The position numbers were made by a program, and so were the translations under genes. Below, in pieces: positions 18,466 to 51,301 of a stretch of DNA of 64,000 nucleotides. The notes under the pieces were generated by a model. It worked only from the letters and a program-made list of their open reading frames with translations, searched no databases and was not told where the DNA came from. The stretch lies in IMG/VR virus record IMGVR_UViG_3300040801_002079, positions 186,001-250,000 of that record; one strand, written 5' to 3'. Position 1 is the stretch's first letter. Each line of letters begins with the position of its first letter.

Positions 18466-19893
18466 TTAAACAAATTCTAGGTTGACAACGTTGATCTTAC
18501 CGTAGTAATCAGCGGAGTTGCCTAGAGAGATCGTTGGATCAGTTAGTGCAACCTTGCCGTAACGTGTCATTAGGGAGATCATTGGCTGTGTGGTAACAGG
18601 GTTCATGATCACACCAGTGCTCATTAGAGGAACATATGGTGCATAGAAGTAACCTGCGTCACTTTCGCCGTTTCCGCCTTTGTAACCAACTAGGATGGTT
18701 GAATCACCAGCAGGAGAGGTTGTTCCGGGTGTTTCAGCATTCCATAGGTAGCTGTAGACTTTGATCTTACCGTTTAGCGTACCAACTAGCTTGGTGTCAT
18801 TTGGACCTTCGAAGGAACCTTCGATTGCTGGTGCAAAGACTGCCTTAGCTGCTGTCTGTAGAACAGAAACCATCATTGGGCTAACAACGATCCAGTTACC
18901 GGTTCCGCGACGAGTCTTACGACCAATCTCATTTGCAACTTCGTTGATTGTACCCTGAAGGTTAGCGAAACGATCACCAACAAATGCAGGCGCATAAGTT
19001 GGGCCAGCAGTTGCGCTGTGATCATACGCACGAACCGTACCAGCAAGTGCTAATAGGTCAGAGATGATTTCAGCGTCAATTTCCTGAACGATGTGAGCAG
19101 ACATAGCTTTCGTCATTTCACTTTCAAGATCAAGACCGTGCTGGTTATCTAGGTCCTGCATAGCCTCAAGTGTCCATCCAGCCTGTAGCTTACGTGCTCC
19201 AGCCTGAACTGCCTGACTCAAGACTTCTAGACCCATCTTACGTCCACCGGAACCTTCGATGAAGGAGTTAGAACCACCCAATAGTGTACCCGCAATGTTT
19301 ACACTGTTGTTTAGGTCCATGGTACCGTCTGTACCACCAGTTGCGTAATCAGAACCTGCGCTTGAACCCCAAGCATCGCCATCAGCGGTTGCTGCGTCGA
19401 TATCTGCTGGTGCAGAAGTACCGTCAGCGCCTGCTGCATCCATACCAGAAGCACCGGGGTCCTGAGCCGCACCAGTGTTACCAGAATAGAAAGCGCGTAG
19501 AAGCTTGGTGTTACCGAATGCCTCATCACCAGCAGCTAGATCATATCCACCGAATGGCGATTTAGCTGGATCGTGAGTCATAGCTTCTTCGTAGGTGTAA
19601 CGTAGCGAATAAACAAGACCAACAGGTCCGGTCATTGGCTGTACACCAACTAGCTCTGTACCGATTGTTCCGGGAATTACACGGCGTACAATTGGTAATA
19701 GAGACTGTCTGAAGTTAGCGATATCGTGCGCCTGAACTGAGCCAGCAGCAGCGGTTTCCGCTAGTAGTTGTTTCCTTTGGTTTTCTAACAGTGGAGCGAC
19801 GATCTTACGCTTTGCGCTATCAAGACCTTCTAGAAGCACATCCTTAGCTTCTCCCCAATTCTCTGTTAAAACTTTTGTATCCATTTTACTCAT
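18466..19893 (-). CDS. major capsid protein (gp23-like)
   Basis: VRRVIP, VGVQPMTGPVG, ARKL.A.WTLEAMQDL, TRRG.GN, YAPYVPL, MTRYG. Confidence 0.96.
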   Translation of the reverse strand: MSKMDTKVLTENWGEAKDVLLEGLDSAKRKIVAPLLENQRKQLLAETAAAGSVQAHDIANFRQSLLPIVRRVIPGTIGTELVGVQPMTGPVGLVYSLRYTYEEAMTHDPAKSPFGGYDLAAGDEAFGNTKLLRAFYSGNTGAAQDPGASGMDAAGADGTSAPADIDAATADGDAWGSSAGSDYATGGTDGTMDLNNSVNIAGTLLGGSNSFIEGSGGRKMGLEVLSQAVQAGARKLQAGWTLEAMQDLDNQHGLDLESEMTKAMSAHIVQEIDAEIISDLLALAGTVRAYDHSATAGPTYAPAFVGDRFANLQGTINEVANEIGRKTRRGTGNWIVVSPMMVSVLQTAAKAVFAPAIEGSFEGPNDTKLVGTLNGKIKVYSYLWNAETPGTTSPAGDSTILVGYKGGNGESDAGYFYAPYVPLMSTGVIMNPVTTQPMISLMTRYGKVALTDPTISLGNSADYYGKINVVNLEFV

Positions 19894-30735: not shown

Positions 30736-31845
30736 ATGAAATTATATTTTTACAATACACTACTGAACATTATGAAAATGTTTATCCAATGTGATAGACC
30801 ACTAAGCCATAAGAACTATAAAAAGATATACAAAAAGAAACTATACTTTGAATTAAAGCAAAAACATGATTTTAAAGAATTTGATTTATGGTTTAATCGT
30901 ACATGGAAGTATGCGATTTTAGACAATACCAATAGTGACACATTTGTTGGCTCAGTTATAGAATCTACTATCCTATTAATGAAGCAGTTTAGCCTCAGAC
31001 ATGTGTGTGGAATTCAACCACTTAACGGTCCAGTTGGGTCGGCATATACACTATCAATTACCCGCAATGACACCAATCCATCCAAAATGTGTTTAGAAGT
31101 CATAGCAAACAGTGTACAAGCGGAAGCCAAGCGGCTGAATACCCAATATACCCTTGAGGCTGCACAGGATTTAAAGACGCATCATAATATTGATTTACAT
31201 CAAGACTTGAATGAGATGATATCTCAATCCATTGACGCAGAATTTATGGAAGAATTTATATCCGAAGTAAAAGAAAAGTCCCCCATTAAAGAAACTTTCA
31301 CTATGGACACCATAAATGCAAATACCATGGAACTGCTGCACGGTCAAATTAATATCATAGCTAGTAAAATTGCAATGATAACACGCCGGGGTGCGGGCAA
31401 TGTCATCTTCACATCCCCCTATATTGCTGCCCTACTTGAAGAATATGGACACATCAAACCGAATAGTTATAATTCAGACCTAGATAGTTTAAACCTTCGA
31501 CACGTTGGGCTTCTCAACCAGAAAAGAGACATTCAGGTATATTCATATAATGGTGCAGAACCTGAATTTCTAATGATGGGATATAAGGGGTTGAACGAAA
31601 CCGATGCGGGTCTAATTTTCTGCCCGTATATACCAATACTGTCCACTGGAGTTGTTATGGATAAGGAAACGTTTAACCCCACTGTTACATTTATGACTCG
31701 CTATGGAAGGCAGGCAGTTAATGATACCACCGAATCATGGGAAATGGAAAACAACAATCGCTTCATCTATTATGGTATATTGGATTTGAAATTACCGGAA
31801 GCATATGAGGGTGACGCTCAGTTACTGATGGAAAACGCTGCATAA
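30736..31845 (+). CDS. second, divergent gp23-family capsid protein
   Basis: CGIQPLNGPVG, YTLEAAQDL, TRRGAGN, FCPYIP, FMTRYG; own sigma70 promoter TTGACT-N17-TACACT. Confidence 0.85.
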   Translation: MKLYFYNTLLNIMKMFIQCDRPLSHKNYKKIYKKKLYFELKQKHDFKEFDLWFNRTWKYAILDNTNSDTFVGSVIESTILLMKQFSLRHVCGIQPLNGPVGSAYTLSITRNDTNPSKMCLEVIANSVQAEAKRLNTQYTLEAAQDLKTHHNIDLHQDLNEMISQSIDAEFMEEFISEVKEKSPIKETFTMDTINANTMELLHGQINIIASKIAMITRRGAGNVIFTSPYIAALLEEYGHIKPNSYNSDLDSLNLRHVGLLNQKRDIQVYSYNGAEPEFLMMGYKGLNETDAGLIFCPYIPILSTGVVMDKETFNPTVTFMTRYGRQAVNDTTESWEMENNNRFIYYGILDLKLPEAYEGDAQLLMENAA

Positions 31846-34830: not shown

Positions 34831-35280
34831 CTATAATTTTCTCACTAAACTTGCCACATCAATATCGATATTAAACTCTTCAGATAATTGCGTCAAGTCA
34901 TCATATAAAAGAGAAGTTAATTCTCTAGTCTTGAACGGAACAATTGCATCTTTAATCTCATGAAATTGTTTCAGTCCTTCATATTCCTTATTTAGCTGTT
35001 CTAGAAGAGTGCGTAACATCACATATTCGCCCACCAATGGATTAACAACTCGCTCATTACAGCCAAGAATATGTGACACCTCAATGTCCCGAACAATGGA
35101 CAATGCCATCAACTGCAAATCAAACAGGTCTAATGACGAATCCCATTTGGTAGGTTTATCACATGCTTCTCGAATTGCATTTTCACGCTTGGGTTTCATT
35201 GTATCCGGAAGAATGCTTGGGGGATACACTAATAGACGGGCCTTTAGGCTCTCAAAATACTCTGCGCTTTTATATTTCAT
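34831..35280 (-). CDS. hypothetical protein
   Basis: coupled ORF. Confidence 0.55.
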   Translation of the reverse strand: MKYKSAEYFESLKARLLVYPPSILPDTMKPKRENAIREACDKPTKWDSSLDLFDLQLMALSIVRDIEVSHILGCNERVVNPLVGEYVMLRTLLEQLNKEYEGLKQFHEIKDAIVPFKTRELTSLLYDDLTQLSEEFNIDIDVASLVRKL

Positions 35281-35543
35281 AACACACGCTTTAAGTCATA
35301 CACCCATTTAATTTCATCGCCAGATAAACTTCGATCCCATATAGCAACCTCATCGATATGAAGGTTGTATTTCTTAGCAATATATTTTGCATCTTCATAA
35401 TTGTCAACGGGGCACATAGGAGTTCCATGAGGATACTCCAATTCTTTAACAGTATTACGAGCTAAAAGACTTGGCGCTGCTGCAACACCAACTGCACCCA
35501 CTACTGCACCCGGAACTAATTTCAAAAAGTTTCTACGTTTCAT
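35277..35543 (-). CDS. Tat-signal protein with LamG-like C-terminal fragment
   Basis: MKRRNFLK; HIDEVAIWDRSLSGDEI. Confidence 0.6.
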   Translation of the reverse strand: MKRRNFLKLVPGAVVGAVGVAAAPSLLARNTVKELEYPHGTPMCPVDNYEDAKYIAKKYNLHIDEVAIWDRSLSGDEIKWVYDLKRVL

Positions 35544-38163: not shown

Positions 38164-38251
38164 TGGTGGGACCGGCAGGATTCGAACCTGCAATGGGATT
38201 TCTCCGCCTGATTAAGAGTCAGGTACCTTCAGCCAATTCGGTCACGATCCC
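38164..38251 (-). tRNA. tRNA-Lys(CTT) with long variable arm
   Basis: loop CTCTTAA, 15-nt variable region, CCA. Confidence 0.85.
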
Positions 38252-38396: not shown

Positions 38397-39869
38397 CTAT
38401 TTAAAATCATGAAAGAGCCACCAGTTAATCTTTTTGCCTGTTCTTATGGTGAACACCTTGGCAACATGTCTAGCCCCGAACGCCATAGCAAACAATAACG
38501 CCAATAGAATACCAAACCATGTATGTTGCACAAAGGCAAAATATAAAAAGTTTTCAAAAGTCGATGGGACGAGTGTCATAAACCCATTATATAAGCGAGA
38601 ATTAACACTTGGATCAAATTCAGAAGAACTGAAATACCAAACCAATATTGCAGTAAATAGAGTCAATTCCGTTATGACATGATATAGCACAGTTCGAATC
38701 ATATGCAACATGTTAATTCTGGATTTCAGTTTTTTAACATCATCAACGCCCACTTCGTACACGATAGGTGGTTGATCTTGTTTTGTTCCAACAATTTCAA
38801 ATTTATTGGGAAACACTGGTGCATATCTTCTTAATGAAATTCGTTCAAACACAGAGTCATGTATTTTTATATTACCCTCAACCATCGTCTCAGATATATC
38901 CCGTATATGACGAGGAGAATATCTATAATATCCCATTATCCCACGCCGTGAATCTGGTAGTGAGCCACCGGGGTTCATTCCATCTTTAACATCTGACCAT
39001 AAATTAGGGTTAAATATCACCCCATGAGATGCTGCCCTTTCCATCATCCAGTCTAGTGTAATCATTGATAAGCCTGTACGCTCTAATCCGCCTCCCACAT
39101 TACTGTGTCCTCCTGCAAACCAGACTTGTTCAATGTGTTGAGGACGTTCTGTATCATTTTCATTCCATAGGTTAGGATGAAAAGACTTTCTTTCATCATC
39201 TATAGCTAATGCATGATATGCGTGTTTTACATTTTTATCCAATTGAAATTCATAGTATCGATGAGGGAAAAATACATTTGTTATTTTATCTATGAGCATT
39301 GATAAGCCGATCACAAGCCAAGAAGAGTCTTTAGGGAATCCCAGTGCTTCAACTGTGTCCCATGCACCAATCATTTCAATGTCCACACTTCCGTGGGTTT
39401 TCCTAGCTTTAAAATCTTCTAGTTCGTCTTTGTACTTTTCAGAACGTTTATATAGACGCAAAGCTTTTAAACACTCAATTGTAAATTTAATTCTATCCAA
39501 TCTACCGCTCGTGGTTACAACTTTAGAATCTTTCTTTAAAAGACCAACCCTCTGTATCATACCGACTGCTGCCCTAACTGTAGCGGCTCCGCGACTGAAC
39601 CCGAAGAAAAATATTTTATCTCCCGGTTCATAATGCCTAGCTAGATATCCATAAAGATTTAATACATTTTTTTGAAAACCGAAGCCAAATGCTCCAGACA
39701 GTAAACGCATAAAACCTAAGCCCTTTGAGCCTATACCATCATCATAGTATGCAATCTGGGTTGTATTCTGTGTATCTACAGCCTTATAAAGCTGAAACAC
39801 ATTGGTGTTGAGTATTGCTCCGCCAGCCTTACCTGTACCATCTGAGCATAAAATAATATTCTTGGACAT
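38397..39869 (-). CDS. DUF2235/Tle1-like alpha/beta hydrolase with C-terminal TM helices
   Basis: LCSDGT, GFSRGAA, WDTV, HALAIDDER, QVWFAGGHSNVGGG. Confidence 0.9.
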   Translation of the reverse strand: MSKNIILCSDGTGKAGGAILNTNVFQLYKAVDTQNTTQIAYYDDGIGSKGLGFMRLLSGAFGFGFQKNVLNLYGYLARHYEPGDKIFFFGFSRGAATVRAAVGMIQRVGLLKKDSKVVTTSGRLDRIKFTIECLKALRLYKRSEKYKDELEDFKARKTHGSVDIEMIGAWDTVEALGFPKDSSWLVIGLSMLIDKITNVFFPHRYYEFQLDKNVKHAYHALAIDDERKSFHPNLWNENDTERPQHIEQVWFAGGHSNVGGGLERTGLSMITLDWMMERAASHGVIFNPNLWSDVKDGMNPGGSLPDSRRGIMGYYRYSPRHIRDISETMVEGNIKIHDSVFERISLRRYAPVFPNKFEIVGTKQDQPPIVYEVGVDDVKKLKSRINMLHMIRTVLYHVITELTLFTAILVWYFSSSEFDPSVNSRLYNGFMTLVPSTFENFLYFAFVQHTWFGILLALLFAMAFGARHVAKVFTIRTGKKINWWLFHDFK

Positions 39870-39887
39870 GAATATATTTATTTAAAT

Positions 39888-39975
39888 TGGTGGGACCGGC
39901 AGGATTCGAACCTGCAACGGGATTTCTCCTCCGGATTAAAAGTCCGGTACCTTCAGCCAATTCGGTCACGATCCC
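39888..39975 (-). tRNA. tRNA-Lys(TTT) with long variable arm
   Basis: near-identical to 38164-38251, loop CTTTTAA. Confidence 0.85.
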
Positions 39976-40308: not shown

Positions 40309-40701
40309 TTATAACAATTCGAGATTACCTGTATACTTATCCAGTATCTCAGGGTCTGCTGGGCCAACCGCTAGACATGTATAGGTTGGCTCTTTGAATT
40401 CGGTTCTACCTTCGTCCTGAATTAAAGCGTGATGTTCAAGACCCCTGACATCCCTAATTTCTTCATAAAGATCAAGTAACTCTCTTTCAGAATCAACACT
40501 AACGCAAATCTTAGTGAACTTACCGTTTAACCATGCATTCATCTGAGGAGTTAAAGGAATAACCCTATGTCCTCTTTCACCATAATTGGAAAGGTTAATG
40601 GAGTCTTTTAAAATAGCACCCATTGATGCGTGTGCACCTTGCGCAACCATTTTACCCTTACGCATGTTTAAATCTTTGCGCATTACAATTACTTGTTTCA
40701 T
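40309..40701 (-). CDS. peptidyl-tRNA hydrolase, Pth2 family
   Basis: KQVIVMRKDLNMRKGKMVAQGAHA, IQDEGRTEF, TCLAVGP. Confidence 0.92.
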   Translation of the reverse strand: MKQVIVMRKDLNMRKGKMVAQGAHASMGAILKDSINLSNYGERGHRVIPLTPQMNAWLNGKFTKICVSVDSERELLDLYEEIRDVRGLEHHALIQDEGRTEFKEPTYTCLAVGPADPEILDKYTGNLELL

Positions 40702-42229: not shown

Positions 42230-42697
42230 TTAATACTCCAATATATCTGTATTCTTCAATTTAAAACGTATATCCATAAGTCTACTACAAAACTCTTGCT
42301 TTGTCAAAACAGTCTCGCTTTTCTTATTTCTTCCGATACTGTGAGTTAGGTTTGCATCGCCTGTAGCTAAGAGAGCTTTGCGGGCCTTTTCGTTCTGAGA
42401 AAATAATGCCCAGTATGCACCATCAAGCAATTCCTGATACTCTGCTGAATCTCGTTTAATAGCTTTATCTTTCCAGTACAATGTTTGATCACGTTGCCAA
42501 TTCTTGCCAGAACCTGCTTTCTTGGCTGCAAACCCAACCAATGTGCAGATATGTTTCTGCATGTCTGGATTTTTAAATTTAAGTGCCTGTAAAAACCCTT
42601 CCATGGAATTACATTCAACCCCATCAAACACAAAGGGATGTGGGGCAAAGTTTGACAATGCATTTGATGGGTATGTTTTTCCCGATCTAATGTCCAC
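42230..42697 (-). CDS. NADAR-like protein (T4 gp30.3 family)
   Basis: ALSNFAPHPFVFDG, SMEGFLQ, LLATG..LTHSIG. Confidence 0.8.
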   Translation of the reverse strand: MDIRSGKTYPSNALSNFAPHPFVFDGVECNSMEGFLQALKFKNPDMQKHICTLVGFAAKKAGSGKNWQRDQTLYWKDKAIKRDSAEYQELLDGAYWALFSQNEKARKALLATGDANLTHSIGRNKKSETVLTKQEFCSRLMDIRFKLKNTDILEY

Positions 42698-42817: not shown

Positions 42818-42903
42818 TGGAGCGGGTACGCGGAATCGAACCGCAAGTCCTAACGGAATCGGGGTGGAAGCCCGACAGCGACACCAGATAGCTCAGTACC
42901 CGC
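42818..42903 (-). tRNA. tRNA-Gly(TCC) with long variable arm
   Basis: GCGGGTA acceptor, U73, loop CTTCCAC, V-arm TTCCGTTAGGACT. Confidence 0.8.
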
Positions 42904-42994: not shown

Positions 42995-43489
42995 TCATTT
43001 AATTTCACGAAACATTACATAATCTAAATGGCAAAAATAAAAGTCTCCATATCGTCTTGATTTTCTATCATATATGTTTCGAACCTTCCATTGTTTTCTT
43101 GTATTTTCAGGAATAATCATACAGTGTGTCAATGTTTTATTCGCTATAACATAAGAATATAATGGCAATTCATGATCGCCATCGGCCTTATATTTTTCAT
43201 CAACGATAATATCAGGGTAAGCAAATTCTTCCTTTGATTTAAAGTTCATATCGGGGCGATGCTTTACCTCAATTCGTCCTTCATTTCCTTCATGTATAAT
43301 CTTTAAATCACCTTCGTCCGTATGACTCCATCGACTTCGGTAATCCGGAGTTAAAGATTGATCCAATTTTACAACATTTAACCCCATACTCACTAACCAT
43401 TGACATACAACATCTGCTGCTACCATGCCTTTACAGTAATCTACTCTAAAATCGTCATCTGGTTTCATATAACTTGCCTTTCCAACCAC
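42995..43489 (-). CDS. hypothetical PD-(D/E)xK-like protein
   Basis: DEGDL...IEVKHR. Confidence 0.55.
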   Translation of the reverse strand: MVGKASYMKPDDDFRVDYCKGMVAADVVCQWLVSMGLNVVKLDQSLTPDYRSRWSHTDEGDLKIIHEGNEGRIEVKHRPDMNFKSKEEFAYPDIIVDEKYKADGDHELPLYSYVIANKTLTHCMIIPENTRKQWKVRNIYDRKSRRYGDFYFCHLDYVMFREIK

Positions 43490-43493
43490 TGTT

Positions 43494-43742
43494 CTATATT
43501 ATATAACTTCCCCAGTTATCTAATTCTCCATTCCATTCATACCGAAGTGTGAATATTTCACCAACGGGGCCAGTCATTGGCTGAACACCTACCAACTGTT
43601 CAACAATCATCATAGGATAAAAATTACGCACATATGAAACCATCCATGATGATTCATCAATTATTCCAACCCTCTCTAAAAAACTTATGCTTGGAGTAAG
43701 GGCTGCAATAACAAAGCCTTTTAATAATGATCGTCTTTTCAT
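43494..43742 (-). CDS. Tat-signal protein carrying a gp23 (Gol-region) fragment
   Basis: MKRRSLLKG; VRNFYPMMIVEQLVGVQPMTGPVGEIFTLRY. Confidence 0.75.
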   Translation of the reverse strand: MKRRSLLKGFVIAALTPSISFLERVGIIDESSWMVSYVRNFYPMMIVEQLVGVQPMTGPVGEIFTLRYEWNGELDNWGSYII

Positions 43743-43759
43743 AATTTTATCCTTTAATT

Positions 43760-43836
43760 TGGCGGGGAAGGAGGGACTCGAACCCCCGACCCGCAGATTA
43801 ACAATCTGCCGCTCTGACCAACTGAGCTACTTCCCC
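43760..43836 (-). tRNA. tRNA-Asn(GTT)
   Basis: loop TTGTTAA, CCA. Confidence 0.95.
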
Positions 43837-45570: not shown

Positions 45571-45663
45571 TGGTAGTAGGGGAGGGATTCGAACCCATCA
45601 CCAACCTCTAATCTGGAGTTCGAGATTATAAATCTCGTCGTGCTACCGTTACACCACCCTACC
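45571..45663 (-). tRNA. tRNA-Ile(TAT) with long variable arm
   Basis: loop TTTATAA, V-arm AACTCCAGATTAGAGGTT, CCA. Confidence 0.8.
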
Positions 45664-46599: not shown

Positions 46600-46675
46600 T
46601 GGCAGGCGAGGAGGGCCTCGAACCCCCAACCTGCGGTTTTGGAGACCGCTGCTCTTCCAATTAAGCTACTCGCCT
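46600..46675 (-). tRNA. tRNA-Trp(CCA)
   Basis: loop CTCCAAA, CCA. Confidence 0.95.
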
Positions 46676-47283
46676 ATTTTCTTACAATTCTCAAAATGCC
46701 ACCTAGTCATTCCATTTTGTACACCACGCAATCCACAATGGGGGCAAGTTACATATATCTTTTCTTTCAACTTTAATGATTCGCTAATTTTATTTATATG
46801 TTCTAGTGTTTTTGGTTTCGAAGCAGCTTTTGATGCATGGGACTTTTGTGCTAAAGGGTCGCGCCTAGACCAGTGATTCTTCGACATTAGGTGGCGAGTT
46901 TTATCTGATACTGGTGGTCGCTTTAACGCTGCTTGCCGAATCTTATTCTTTGTTTCAAAATTATGGGATTTACCACTAAATGCACCAATAATTCCGGGAT
47001 TACCTCCACTTCCGCCAACTTTTAAATTATAACATAACGGGCTATTAACTACCGATTCATTAACCAAGCTTCGCTCAATATAAAACATCTCTTCCTTAGT
47101 ATCAACCACGGCTAAAATTTCTTTCTCAAAATTCTCAATTCCATATTTTTTAATGGCTCGTTTCAAAACCTTGCCCGAACCCATATACCCATCATTTAAA
47201 TCAACGGTCTTATGGCAACCTATATAAAACCTACCGTTGATTTTATTTGTTATCTTATAAACAATGTATTTAATGTCTATCAT
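46666..47283 (-). mobile_element. GIY-YIG (Seg-like) homing endonuclease with NUMOD3-like repeats
   Basis: [17 protein letters not shown]; N-terminus near-identical to 33906-34685; TATAAATA upstream. Confidence 0.85.
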
Positions 47284-47304
47284 GTATGTATTTATACTAA
47301 TATT

Positions 47305-47356
47305 TGGTGGGGAAGCCAGAACGAGCCGTTGGCCCGCGTGTGTACACACCCTCCCC
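47305..47356 (-). ncRNA. 52-nt mini RNA with acceptor-like stem and ACCA
   Basis: GGGGAGG...CTTCCCC-ACCA. Confidence 0.6.
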
Positions 47357-47362
47357 ATTGTT

Positions 47363-47452
47363 TGGTACTCTGGGTCGGACTCGAACCGACACGGGCACAC
47401 ACGGCCCACTGGATTTTAAATCCAGCGCGACTACCAATTTCGCCACCAGAGC
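47363..47452 (-). tRNA. tRNA-Leu(TAA)
   Basis: loop TTTAAAA, long V-arm. Confidence 0.93.
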
Positions 47453-51107: not shown

Positions 51108-51219
51108 CTATTTATGATATTACAAATAAGTATGGAAGTCAAGTTGACAATGGCAGTTGCCGCATTGCCTTCCGTCCCCGACACCTGTTCACACACTGCC
51201 ATGCATTATGCGGTGCCTC

Positions 51220-51292
51220 ACACCCCGACAGGAGTCGAACCTGCAACCGAGAGCTACTATGCCCCCAACTCTGCCGTTGAGTTTACGGAGTA
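51220..51292 (-). pseudogene. tRNA-like element with aberrant anticodon loop, no CCA
   Basis: acceptor TACTCCG/CGGGGTG, D and T arms, 6- or 8-nt loop around ATAGTA. Confidence 0.6.
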
Positions 51293-51301
51293 TTTCTAAT
51301 T

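What the first reader, a model, noticed from the sequence alone, without database searches (positions are those of the whole stretch)
43494..43742. Tat-leader mini-protein carrying the Gol-peptide region of the capsid protein
Seen: YVRNFYPMMIVEQLVGVQPMTGPVGEIFTLRY aligns with this phage's MCP IVRRVIPGTIGTELVGVQPMTGPVGLVYSLRY, with LVGVQPMTGPVG identical. Established: the equivalent segment of T4 gp23 is the Gol peptide that binds EF-Tu and activates the Lit protease. Inference: a decoy or titrator of capsid-sensing immunity, or an EF-Tu modulator located within the translation island.
Basis: partly seen in the sequence, partly recalled or inferred. Interest (0 to 1): 0.7.

Follow-up and report, generated by a model that had tools for sequence, protein, structure and literature searches.

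The report
Exported mini-protein copying a capsid segment
A giant phage carries a small, conserved gene that joins a bacterial export signal of the twin-arginine (Tat) type to a copy of the most conserved stretch of its own capsid protein; this turns out to be a widespread, unnamed family in uncultured T4-like phages whose job, perhaps mimicking the capsid to divert a host factor, is still unknown.

Summary
Window 43494..43742 (-) is an 82-aa ORF (P0001) with a good ribosome-binding site. Residues 34-70 match Pfam Gp23 (E 7.7e-10) and T4 gp23 residues 95-130, the Gol-containing region. It shares 12 identical residues with this phage's own capsid protein, yet 7 of those 36 bases differ, all synonymously, so it is not a recent copy. 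Two orthologues give dN/dS 0.15-0.26. It is not a one-off: at least 54 distinct small proteins (67-159 aa) from metagenomic T4-like phages have the same build, RR-x-F-[LF]-K plus a hydrophobic stretch, a Pro/Lys-rich linker, then the capsid segment. None carries a name, and no copy was found in about 2,500 deposited phage genomes with Gp23-type capsid genes. The capsid module keeps the same conserved positions as real capsid proteins. One related phage also carries a Tat-leader mini-protein bearing a different gp23 segment, so the design is not specific to Gol. The Tat leader and the Gol equivalence are supported. The decoy and EF-Tu roles remain inference: the complex prediction gave no answer and expression could not be shown. 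My best guess (about 0.35) is a membrane- or Tat-targeted mimic of unassembled capsid protein that diverts a host factor recognising that segment.

The parts
43494..43742 (-). Mini-protein gene (82 aa + TAG), P0001
   Evidence: identical protein on 7 contigs from several samples; orthologues P0004 (67% identity) and P0158 (71%) of the same length class
43750..43754 (-). Shine-Dalgarno-like AAGGA, 7 nt before the ATG
   Evidence: read from the sequence
43671..43742 (-). Leader, residues 1-24: MK-RRSLLK plus an uncharged h-region (GFVIAALTPSISF)
   Evidence: modelled as a helix, residues 3-24
43719..43736 (-). Twin-arginine motif RRSLLK (residues 3-8)
   Evidence: among 54 family members picked on RR plus two hydrophobic residues, F at +3 in 47 and K/R at +5 in 44; these positions were not fixed by the selection pattern
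43644..43670 (-). Linker, residues 25-33
   Evidence: alignment A6; variable in length and Pro/Lys-rich across the family
43533..43643 (-). Capsid-derived module, residues 34-70 (counterpart of T4 gp23 95-130, the Gol-containing region)
   Evidence: Pfam Gp23 profile positions 8-44, E 7.7e-10; T4 alignment; lowest dN of the gene
43497..43532 (-). C-terminal tail, residues 71-82 (NGELDNWGSYII); the W-G-x-[YF]-[IL]-[IV] end occurs only in this subfamily
   Evidence: alignments A4 and A6
43760..43836 (-). tRNA-Asn immediately upstream, same strand; probably co-transcribed
   Evidence: a distant family member also starts 5 nt after a tRNA (L016)
18466..19893 (-). Major capsid protein gene (P0002); the segment the mini-protein resembles lies at about 19588-19707

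Best explanation
SHOWN: this is a real protein-coding accessory gene. It belongs to a previously unnamed family of phage mini-proteins in uncultured T4-superfamily and jumbo phages. Each member has an N-terminal twin-arginine (Tat-type) signal with a moderately hydrophobic h-region, a short Pro/Lys-rich linker, and a roughly 37-residue module. That module is homologous to the end of the N-terminal arm and the first core elements of the Gp23-type major capsid protein, the region that holds Gol in T4. Some members add a short variable tail. The module keeps the same conserved positions as genuine capsid proteins although the rest of the capsid fold is absent, and on its own it is predicted to be largely unstructured. 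INFERRED: the protein is a peptide-like mimic of unassembled or nascent capsid protein. Its module engages whatever partner reads that segment in the capsid protein. The only such recognition shown experimentally is T4 Gol binding EF-Tu and thereby exposing it to the Lit protease. The leader would take the mimic, and possibly its bound partner, to the Tat receptor at the inner membrane or across it. This would pre-empt or divert a host factor, most plausibly capsid-sensing abortive infection, before the capsid protein is made in bulk.
For: Real gene under selection. The ORF length is kept in three orthologues, with dN/dS 0.26, 0.18 and 0.15, and dN is lowest in the module. The 12-residue run identical to the phage's own capsid protein differs at 7 of 36 bases, all synonymous.

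Family. A profile search of 1.8 billion representatives and a word-index search of 5.8 billion clusters recovered at least 54 distinct small proteins with the same layout. Some lie on contigs of 110-317 kb with T4-type genes such as gp32, gp59, UvsX-like, Rnl1/Rnl2 and PNKP.

Tat leader. RR is present in 34 of the 35 sequences of alignment A6. F at +3 occurs in 47 of 54 and K/R at +5 in 44 of 54. The uncharged stretch has a median of 15 residues, and basic residues follow it. Pfam TAT_signal and TIGR01409 each match 4 of 13 members (best E 1.4e-4 and 1.9e-3).

Mimicry. Position-by-position residue preferences of the module are nearly the same in the Tat mini-proteins as in capsid proteins. The AlphaFold2 model has low confidence outside the helices (pLDDT 64).

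The module is reused in other small proteins without a leader or with another C-terminal domain. A Tat-leader mini-protein with a different gp23 segment exists in a related phage.

The gene is accessory and stands alone. No neighbour is conserved across lineages, and it is absent from the nearest cultured relatives. It sits in early-type or hyperplastic regions rich in tRNA genes and RNA-repair genes.

Literature: Gol is a 29-residue peptide that binds EF-Tu domains II/III, activates Lit, and lies in the most conserved part of gp23 (PMC3014915).
Against: No partner is identified. The EF-Tu complex prediction gave no answer, and that is not evidence either way.

Topology argues against a cytoplasmic decoy. 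A working Tat signal puts the passenger in the periplasm, or on the outer face of the inner membrane if uncleaved, away from EF-Tu, Lit-type proteases and known capsid sensors. No good signal-peptidase site is apparent, and a Pro often follows the candidate site.

A free Gol-like peptide would be expected to activate a Lit-type protease, not block it.

P0001 itself is below the TAT_signal HMM thresholds. The closest relative P0005 lacks RR.

Expression is not shown. Metatranscriptomes of the same sample show no contig over the gene, but they are tiny and prove nothing.

The second mini-protein with another gp23 segment weakens any explanation built only on Gol and EF-Tu.
Confidence: 0.35

Rival explanations
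1. An envelope-acting protein. The leader is a genuine, probably uncleaved Tat signal-anchor, and the module is displayed in the periplasm. There it has a role unrelated to capsid sensing, such as superinfection exclusion, control of lysis timing, or interference with a periplasmic chaperone or protease. The capsid segment would simply be the raw material from which a binding peptide evolved.
For: The leader features are the best conserved part outside the module. No convincing signal-peptidase site is seen and Pro often follows the candidate site. The P0001 subfamily ends in W-G-x-[YF]-[IL]-[IV], an aromatic/hydrophobic C-terminus of the kind read by periplasmic PDZ proteases (my own knowledge, untested). 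The same island holds a second Tat-type-leader mini-ORF with an unrelated passenger (P0252, window 35277-35543). By my own knowledge, the known small membrane or periplasmic accessory proteins of T4 (Imm, Sp, RI) act in exclusion and lysis control.
Against: A co-opted peptide with a new partner would not be expected to keep the very same position-specific preferences as capsid proteins over 37 residues. No capsid-related partner is known in the periplasm. The C-terminal motif is limited to one subfamily.
Confidence: 0.25
2. A cytoplasmic Gol-like EF-Tu ligand. The module binds EF-Tu as T4 Gol does and tunes translation or chaperone delivery within the phage's tRNA/translation island. The leader would act only as a membrane tether or stabiliser.
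For: The module is homologous to the Gol-containing segment. The review states that Gol binds EF-Tu domains II/III and that the region's conservation may reflect EF-Tu interaction in all T4-like phages. Contexts include tRNA arrays in three lineages (window, L004/L024, L016), RNA ligases in L017, and PNKP with an RF-1-like gene in L014.
Against: An invariant twin-arginine motif is hard to explain for a cytoplasmic protein. Other contexts are replication genes (gp32, gp59, UvsX, DnaB), so the translation link is not general. The Tat-leader mini-protein with a non-Gol gp23 segment does not fit. The complex prediction gave no answer.
Confidence: 0.15
3. A capsid-assembly accessory. The module binds the capsid protein itself, the scaffold or the portal, which are the natural contacts of the N-terminal arm. 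It would act at the membrane-bound start of prohead assembly, or as a dominant-negative against co-infecting T4-like phages.
For: In T4 the gp23 N-terminal region up to L106 is disordered in the unexpanded head. It is thought to contact the scaffolding core and later forms inter-capsomer contacts, and Met98 helps anchor portal whiskers (PMC9546572). T4 prohead assembly starts on the inner membrane (my own knowledge). Two mini-proteins in one phage carry gp23 segments that lie in or next to the P-domain core; I did not check whether they touch in the fold.
Against: With an N-in signal-anchor topology the module would face the periplasm, not the assembly site. The gene lies far from the structural module and is absent from the nearest cultured relatives, which assemble heads without it. 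A dominant-negative peptide would also hit the phage's own capsid protein, which shares the conserved positions.
Confidence: 0.1
4. A non-functional leftover: a fragment of a duplicated capsid gene, carried around with homing endonucleases in the tRNA island, that happens to remain open.
For: GIY-YIG homing endonuclease genes lie nearby (window 46666-47409; L004 1008-1700). The segment is the most conserved part of gene 23, a typical endonuclease target.
Against: dN/dS is 0.15-0.26 with saturated-range dS (0.9-1.4) and the ORF length is kept. The architecture recurs in at least 54 divergent sequences. The identical peptide run is encoded by diverged synonymous codons. There is a good ribosome-binding site.
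Confidence: 0.03

Closest known systems
Gol peptide of T4 gp23 (trigger of the e14 Lit protease through EF-Tu)
   Same: Homologous segment. Mini-protein residues 34-69 align to gp23 95-130, with V-R-x-x-x-P...G-V-Q-P-M-x-x-P-x-G-x-x-F-x-L-R shared. This is the most conserved part of Gp23-type capsid proteins.
   Different: Gol is an internal stretch of a 521-aa structural protein made late. Here the segment is a free-standing 82-aa gene product with an export-type leader, placed in an early-type accessory region. Neither EF-Tu binding nor Lit activation has been tested.
Bacterial Tat substrates with uncleaved signal-anchors (for example the Rieske Fe-S subunit) and small Tat-signal proteins (TIGR02811 formate-dehydrogenase-region TAT target)
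   Same: An RR-x-F-L-K motif, a weakly hydrophobic h-region of about 15 residues and basic residues after it. There are weak HMM matches to TAT_signal, TIGR01409 and TIGR02811, and for the sister ORF P0252 to the Rieske Tat signal.
   Different: Phage-encoded, about 80-100 aa, no cofactor-binding passenger, and a passenger predicted to be unstructured. Classic Tat passengers are folded. Tat dependence is untested.
Phage proteins that block immune sensors of virion proteins (for example DSAD1 against the tail-tube sensor DSR2; my own knowledge)
   Same: The concept: an early accessory protein occupying or diverting a host factor that otherwise reads a conserved structural protein.
   Different: As far as I know, those inhibitors are not sequence copies of the sensed protein and carry no export signal. 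Here the protein is a literal sequence copy of part of the capsid protein, and no target is known.
T4 small envelope proteins Imm, Sp and RI (superinfection exclusion, lysis inhibition; my own knowledge, with PMC8385771 for the RI signal peptide, seen)
   Same: Small, non-essential, signal-bearing proteins encoded in hyperplastic regions of T4-like genomes.
   Different: No sequence relation. Those use Sec-type signals or transmembrane segments and have no capsid-derived part.

Membership tests
Pfam PF07068 Gp23 (T4-type major capsid protein) | Significant match to the family HMM | tested here: met
   39.1 bits against a 24.4 cut-off, E 7.7e-10, but only profile positions 8-44 of 376; all 13 tested relatives match
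Pfam PF07068 Gp23 (T4-type major capsid protein) | Complete HK97-type fold (P and A domains) able to form a shell | tested here: not met
   82 aa in total. Nothing beyond profile position 44 is present. The model shows three helices and coil. It is a capsid-derived module, not a capsid protein.
Tat (twin-arginine) signal peptides | Consensus (S/T)-R-R-x-F-L-K near the N-terminus | tested here: met
   P0001 has K-R-R-S-L-L-K (L instead of F at +3). In the family, F at +3 occurs in 47 of 54 and K/R at +5 in 44 of 54.
Tat (twin-arginine) signal peptides | Moderately hydrophobic h-region of about 12-20 uncharged residues, often with a basic c-region | tested here: met
   The median uncharged run is 15 residues. 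Mean Kyte-Doolittle hydropathy over the 16 residues after the motif is 1.0-2.0 in the 33 members examined. Lys-rich segments follow.
Tat (twin-arginine) signal peptides | Match to curated signal HMMs (PF10518, TIGR01409) | tested here: inconclusive
   P0001 has no match at E up to 10 (NCBIfam) or E up to 1 (Pfam). Four of 13 relatives match each model (best E 1.4e-4 and 1.9e-3). The bit scores I saw are just under Pfam's 22.7-bit cut-off: P0201 19.1 and P0251 21.9.
Tat (twin-arginine) signal peptides | Signal-peptidase site (small residues at -3/-1, no Pro at +1) | tested here: inconclusive
   By eye, no clear site. Candidate A-x-A positions are often followed by Pro (listing). No dedicated predictor was available. 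The leader may be an uncleaved anchor.
Tat (twin-arginine) signal peptides | Export that depends on TatABC and on the RR pair | not testable with these tools
   Needs fractionation or reporter fusions in wild type against delta-tatC, and an RR-to-KK mutant.
T4 Gol peptide (functional class) | Positional homology to the gp23 Gol region | tested here: met
   Aligned to gp23 95-130. The review equates Gol with the most conserved region of gp23. I could not check the exact Gol residue numbers because the primary papers are not held.
T4 Gol peptide (functional class) | Binds EF-Tu (domains II/III, GDP form) | tested here: inconclusive
   The predicted complex with E. coli EF-Tu scored 0.00, verdict 'no answer'. 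This is not evidence for or against.
T4 Gol peptide (functional class) | Activates Lit to cleave EF-Tu at Gly59-Ile60 | not testable with these tools
   Needs co-expression with e14 Lit and an EF-Tu cleavage assay.
Phage anti-defence decoys | Neutralises a defined defence system | not tested
   No target is known. The only support is context and early-type location.

The most novel reading that the evidence does not exclude
Tat-leader mini-proteins are 'hitchhiker' adaptors. Each displays a short copy of a conserved virion-protein segment: the gp23 N-arm/Gol segment here, the gp23 spine-helix segment in P0251, and possibly a lectin-fold fragment in P0252. A cytoplasmic host sensor (or an EF-Tu-sensor complex) binds the copy. 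Because the Tat system moves bound complexes, the phage would then use the host's own translocon to tether that sensor at the membrane or expel it to the periplasm. That would be a new class of anti-defence by relocation rather than inhibition.
Probability: 0.08. Interest if true: 0.9.

Novelty: new variant of a known kind. Interest (0 to 1): 0.7.

Why it matters
The stretch copied here is the only part of a T4-type capsid protein with a documented second life. It binds EF-Tu and trips an abortive-infection protease, and nobody knows why it is the most conserved part of the protein. The family shows that phages keep this stretch under selection as a free-standing peptide, without the rest of the capsid fold. 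That means its conservation reflects an interaction that can be studied in isolation. A small synthetic gene gives a direct handle on the question of what reads this segment: EF-Tu, a chaperone, an immune sensor or the capsid itself. The invariant twin-arginine leader adds a second question that can be tested: do phages use the host Tat pathway for small effectors? The gene could also serve as a marker for a large group of uncultured jumbo and T4-like phages.

Tried and rejected
1. Complex prediction of E. coli EF-Tu with P0001 residues 26-82 scored 0.00, verdict 'no answer'. It is not used as evidence.

2. Expression. No RNA run holds the gene. Three small metatranscriptomes of the source sample (microbial mat) give only two short contigs near tRNA genes and none over the mini-gene. 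This is uninformative.

3. Cultured relatives. tblastn of four family members (P0001, P0163, P0077, P0091) and one leaderless member (P0012) against 50,697 phage records hit only capsid genes. A blastn search of the locus hit only tRNAs.

4. IMG/VR scans. The P0001-subfamily patterns found nothing. The P0163 subfamily gave one 24-kb contig. The whole-family pattern returned 80 loci, all true capsid genes. So I could not pair mini-proteins with their own capsid genes in other lineages, and the metagenome records are not held for the genome search.

5. A tree of the 37-residue module (199 sequences, quick search). The Tat label needs 21 changes against about 46 when shuffled. There is clustering but no resolution, so single versus repeated origin stays open.

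6. Conserved neighbour. An all-against-all comparison of ORFs in nine loci found no shared gene apart from the mini-protein itself.

7. Promoter and terminator scan: nothing above chance.

8. The structure model has low confidence (pLDDT 64), so I ran no fold search. The Atlas gave only a viral 'Gp23 domain-containing' small-protein cluster.

9. Considered and rejected: a split or intron-interrupted capsid gene, because the genome has an intact capsid gene and one paralogue, each with its own copy of the segment. Also rejected: a recent duplication, because the synonymous sites have diverged.

10. The primary Gol papers are not in the library.

Full report
THE OBSERVATION. Window 43494..43742 (minus strand) is an 82-codon ORF ending in TAG (protein P0001). 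AAGGA lies 7 nt before the ATG. The start is 17 nt downstream of tRNA-Asn (43760-43836), inside a run of 37 same-strand tRNA genes. The window is bases 186001-250000 of a 316,801-bp viral contig with direct terminal repeats, recovered from microbial-mat metagenomes. The phage's capsid protein is window 18466..19893 (P0002, 475 aa, Pfam Gp23 E 1.5e-90). Its nearest cultured relatives are Xanthomonas phage XacN1 (64% identity) and Stenotrophomonas phages CM1/RAS14 (59%). The match is not chance: Pfam Gp23 gives E 7.7e-10 for residues 34-70 and PHROG 138 gives E 2.1e-9. Residues 34-69 align to T4 gp23 95-130. A T4 review describes Gol as a 29-residue stretch of gp23 that binds EF-Tu domains II/III, allows Lit to cut EF-Tu, and lies in the most conserved region of the protein (PMC3014915).

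IT IS A GENE, NOT DEBRIS. The 36 bases encoding the identical run differ at 7 positions from the capsid gene, all synonymous. So the identity is held by selection on the peptide rather than by recent copying. The identical protein occurs on seven contigs from several samples. Two orthologues of the same length class, P0004 (67% identity, L004/L005) and P0158 (71%, L024), lie in similar tRNA-rich surroundings. Nei-Gojobori dN/dS for the three pairs is 0.26, 0.18 and 0.15, with dS about 0.9-1.4. dN is lowest in the capsid-derived module. The genome holds only three Gp23-family sequences: the capsid gene, a 369-aa paralogue (window 30736..31845, plus strand; probably the vertex protein) and this mini-gene. 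The first two each have their own copy of the segment, so a split or intron-interrupted capsid gene is excluded.

IT IS A FAMILY.
- A profile of the three close relatives was searched against 1.8 billion representatives, and a profile of 13 members against 5.8 billion clusters (1,255 proteins at E no higher than 1e-3 within the allowed length range).
- Together these recovered many small proteins with one layout: 2-4 residues, R-R-x-F-[LF]-K, an uncharged stretch (median 15 residues), a Pro/Lys-rich linker (median 14), the 37-residue capsid module, and a tail (median 17).
- A simple filter counts 54 distinct sequences of 67-159 aa, median 92.
- The filter demanded RR plus two hydrophobic residues. 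Within that constraint F at +3 (47 of 54) and K/R at +5 (44 of 54) are independent support for the Tat consensus.
- Pfam TAT_signal and TIGR01409 each match 4 of 13 members (best E 1.4e-4 and 1.9e-3). The bit scores I saw lie just under Pfam's cut-off, and P0001 itself is not matched.
- No member carries an informative name.
- tblastn with four members against 50,697 deposited phage genomes hits only capsid genes. For one query there were 2,558 records and 2,560 places, and no place covered 80% of the query.
- The literature searches returned nothing on such proteins.

WHAT THE MODULE IS. Position by position, the residue preferences of the module in the Tat mini-proteins match those in capsid proteins and capsid fragments. 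Both show I-P-M-I-R-R-x-[FYM]-P-x-L-[IL]-A-x-E-I-V-G-V-Q-P-M-[ST]-G-P-[VT]-G-x-x-F-x-[ML]-x-Y. In T4 the gp23 chain up to L106 is disordered in the unexpanded head. It is thought to touch the scaffold and later becomes the N-arm and N-fist that tie capsomers together (PMC9546572). The module therefore spans the end of that arm and the first ordered elements of the fold. Alone it is modelled with low confidence: leader helix 3-24, helices 30-41 and 43-49, the rest coil, pLDDT 64. Because the rest of the fold is missing, keeping the capsid-type residues implies a partner that reads them. The same module also occurs in small proteins without a leader (P0012, on nine contigs) or with a different roughly 60-residue C-terminal domain (P0006, P0007, P0123). 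It behaves as a portable peptide module.

A FACT THAT WIDENS THE PICTURE. In locus L026, a T4-like contig with gp59 and gp32, the Gol-type mini-protein P0011 lies 1.5 kb from a second mini-protein, P0251 (78 aa). P0251 has the same kind of leader (TAT_signal 21.9 bits). Its passenger matches a different part of Gp23: profile positions 145-194, 25.4 bits, above the cut-off. That corresponds to T4 gp23 261-308, which I take to be the strand and long helix of the P-domain. The window phage itself has a second Tat-type-leader mini-ORF in the tRNA island (35277..35543, P0252). Its tail weakly resembles the last strands of a lectin-type fold. So 'Tat leader plus fragment of a larger protein' may be a more general design. 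An explanation built only on Gol and EF-Tu is then too narrow.

CONTEXT. Apart from the mini-gene no neighbour is shared between distant loci, so it works alone. Settings are of the early or accessory type:
- inside tRNA arrays (window; L004/L024; L016, where the ORF starts 5 nt after a tRNA);
- directly after an RNA ligase with a second ligase upstream (L017);
- near a polynucleotide kinase-phosphatase and an RF-1-like gene (L014);
- beside a DNA methylase and a UvsX-like gene (L018);
- near gp59 and gp32 (L025, L026).
The 'translation island' link is real for some lineages but not general.

HOW IT MOST LIKELY WORKS. Shown: a selected, free-standing copy of the capsid protein's most conserved segment behind a twin-arginine leader. 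Inferred: it mimics unassembled or nascent capsid protein towards a factor that reads that segment, and the leader takes it to the Tat receptor or the membrane. The only documented reader of the segment is EF-Tu, with Lit as the downstream protease. I therefore rank highest (0.35) a diversion of capsid-sensing host functions. The weaknesses are plain:
- export would remove the peptide from the cytoplasm;
- a free Gol-like peptide should trigger Lit rather than block it;
- no partner is known;
- the EF-Tu complex prediction returned no answer;
- expression is unproven.
The rivals are an envelope-acting periplasmic or anchored protein (0.25), a cytoplasmic EF-Tu ligand (0.15), an assembly accessory or anti-competitor peptide (0.10) and a dead fragment (0.03).

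COMPARISON AND NOVELTY. The parts are known (a Tat signal, the gp23 Gol-region segment). The combination, its free-standing form and its spread are not described in any source I could search. It is not a capsid protein, since the fold is absent. It has the sequence features of a Tat substrate, but export is untested. It is a positional homologue of Gol, but Gol's defining activities are untested. I file it as a new variant built from known elements. The most novel reading not excluded is Tat 'hitchhiker' relocation of a host sensor (about 8%).

LIMITS. All family members come from metagenomes. Gene calls at contig ends may inflate the leaderless class. The 37-residue tree cannot decide between one and several origins. 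I could compare a mini-protein with its own capsid gene only in this genome.

Noticed in passing
window 35277-35543 (-), P0252: A second small ORF (88 aa) in the same tRNA island has a Tat-type leader (MKRRNFLK plus a hydrophobic stretch). It weakly matches the Rieske Tat signal PF10399 (E 0.013). Its C-terminal residues 62-79 weakly match the last strands of Laminin_G_3 (profile 134-151 of 151, E 0.033). No paralogue in the genome, and no informative relatives found.
   Followed up: partly
L026 5247-5483 (+), P0251: A 78-aa Tat-leader mini-protein whose passenger matches a different gp23 segment (Pfam Gp23 positions 145-194, 25.4 bits; T4 gp23 261-308). It lies 1.5 kb from the Gol-type mini-protein P0011 in the same T4-like contig. 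The word-index search found only itself.
   Followed up: partly
window 30736-31845 (+), P0003: A 369-aa Gp23 paralogue lacking roughly profile positions 45-130 (the insertion-domain region). It lies on the opposite strand in the middle of the tRNA island, 11 kb from the capsid gene. It is the only other Gp23-family gene in the genome, so probably the vertex protein, in an unusual place.
   Followed up: partly
window 38164-38251, 39888-39975, 42818-42903, 45571-45663, 51219-51293: Unusually long calls for class-I tRNAs: two tRNA-Lys of 88 nt, tRNA-Gly of 86 nt and tRNA-Ile(TAT) of 93 nt. There is also one tRNA-like gene with a two-base anticodon. Similar long Asn, Lys, Thr and Ile(TAT) calls occur in L004 and L016. 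Possible introns or extra arms.
   Followed up: no
window 38397-39869 (-): A 490-aa protein with a T6SS Tle1-like phospholipase catalytic domain (Pfam PF09994, E 3.6e-72) encoded inside the phage tRNA island.
   Followed up: no
window 42995-43489 (-), directly downstream of the mini-gene: A 157-164-aa ORF without a family match. By eye it has a D...E-x-K pattern suggestive of a PD-(D/E)xK nuclease. It is not conserved next to the mini-gene in other lineages.
   Followed up: no
window 42230-42697 (-) and about 40309-40701 (-): A T4 gene 30.3-family protein (PF08010; 80% identical in L004) and a PTH2 peptidyl-tRNA hydrolase lie a few kb from the mini-gene. Both are conserved with it in the close relative L004.
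   Followed up: no
P0006, P0007 (L012, L013), P0123; P0012: The same capsid module occurs at the N-terminus of 120-130-aa proteins with an unrelated C-terminal domain ending in a hydrophobic-L-R-W motif. It also occurs in a leaderless 76-aa protein found on nine contigs (up to 67 kb).
   Followed up: partly
L029-L033 (IMG/VR contigs): Other small phage ORFs (84-159 aa) begin with near-identical MNRRGFLK-type leaders and have passengers without family matches. Two such ORFs are adjacent in L030/L032.
   Followed up: partly
window 46666-47409 (-); L004 1008-1700: GIY-YIG (SegE-like) homing endonuclease genes are scattered through the tRNA island. A related copy lies about 360 bp upstream of the mini-gene orthologue in L004.
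   Followed up: no
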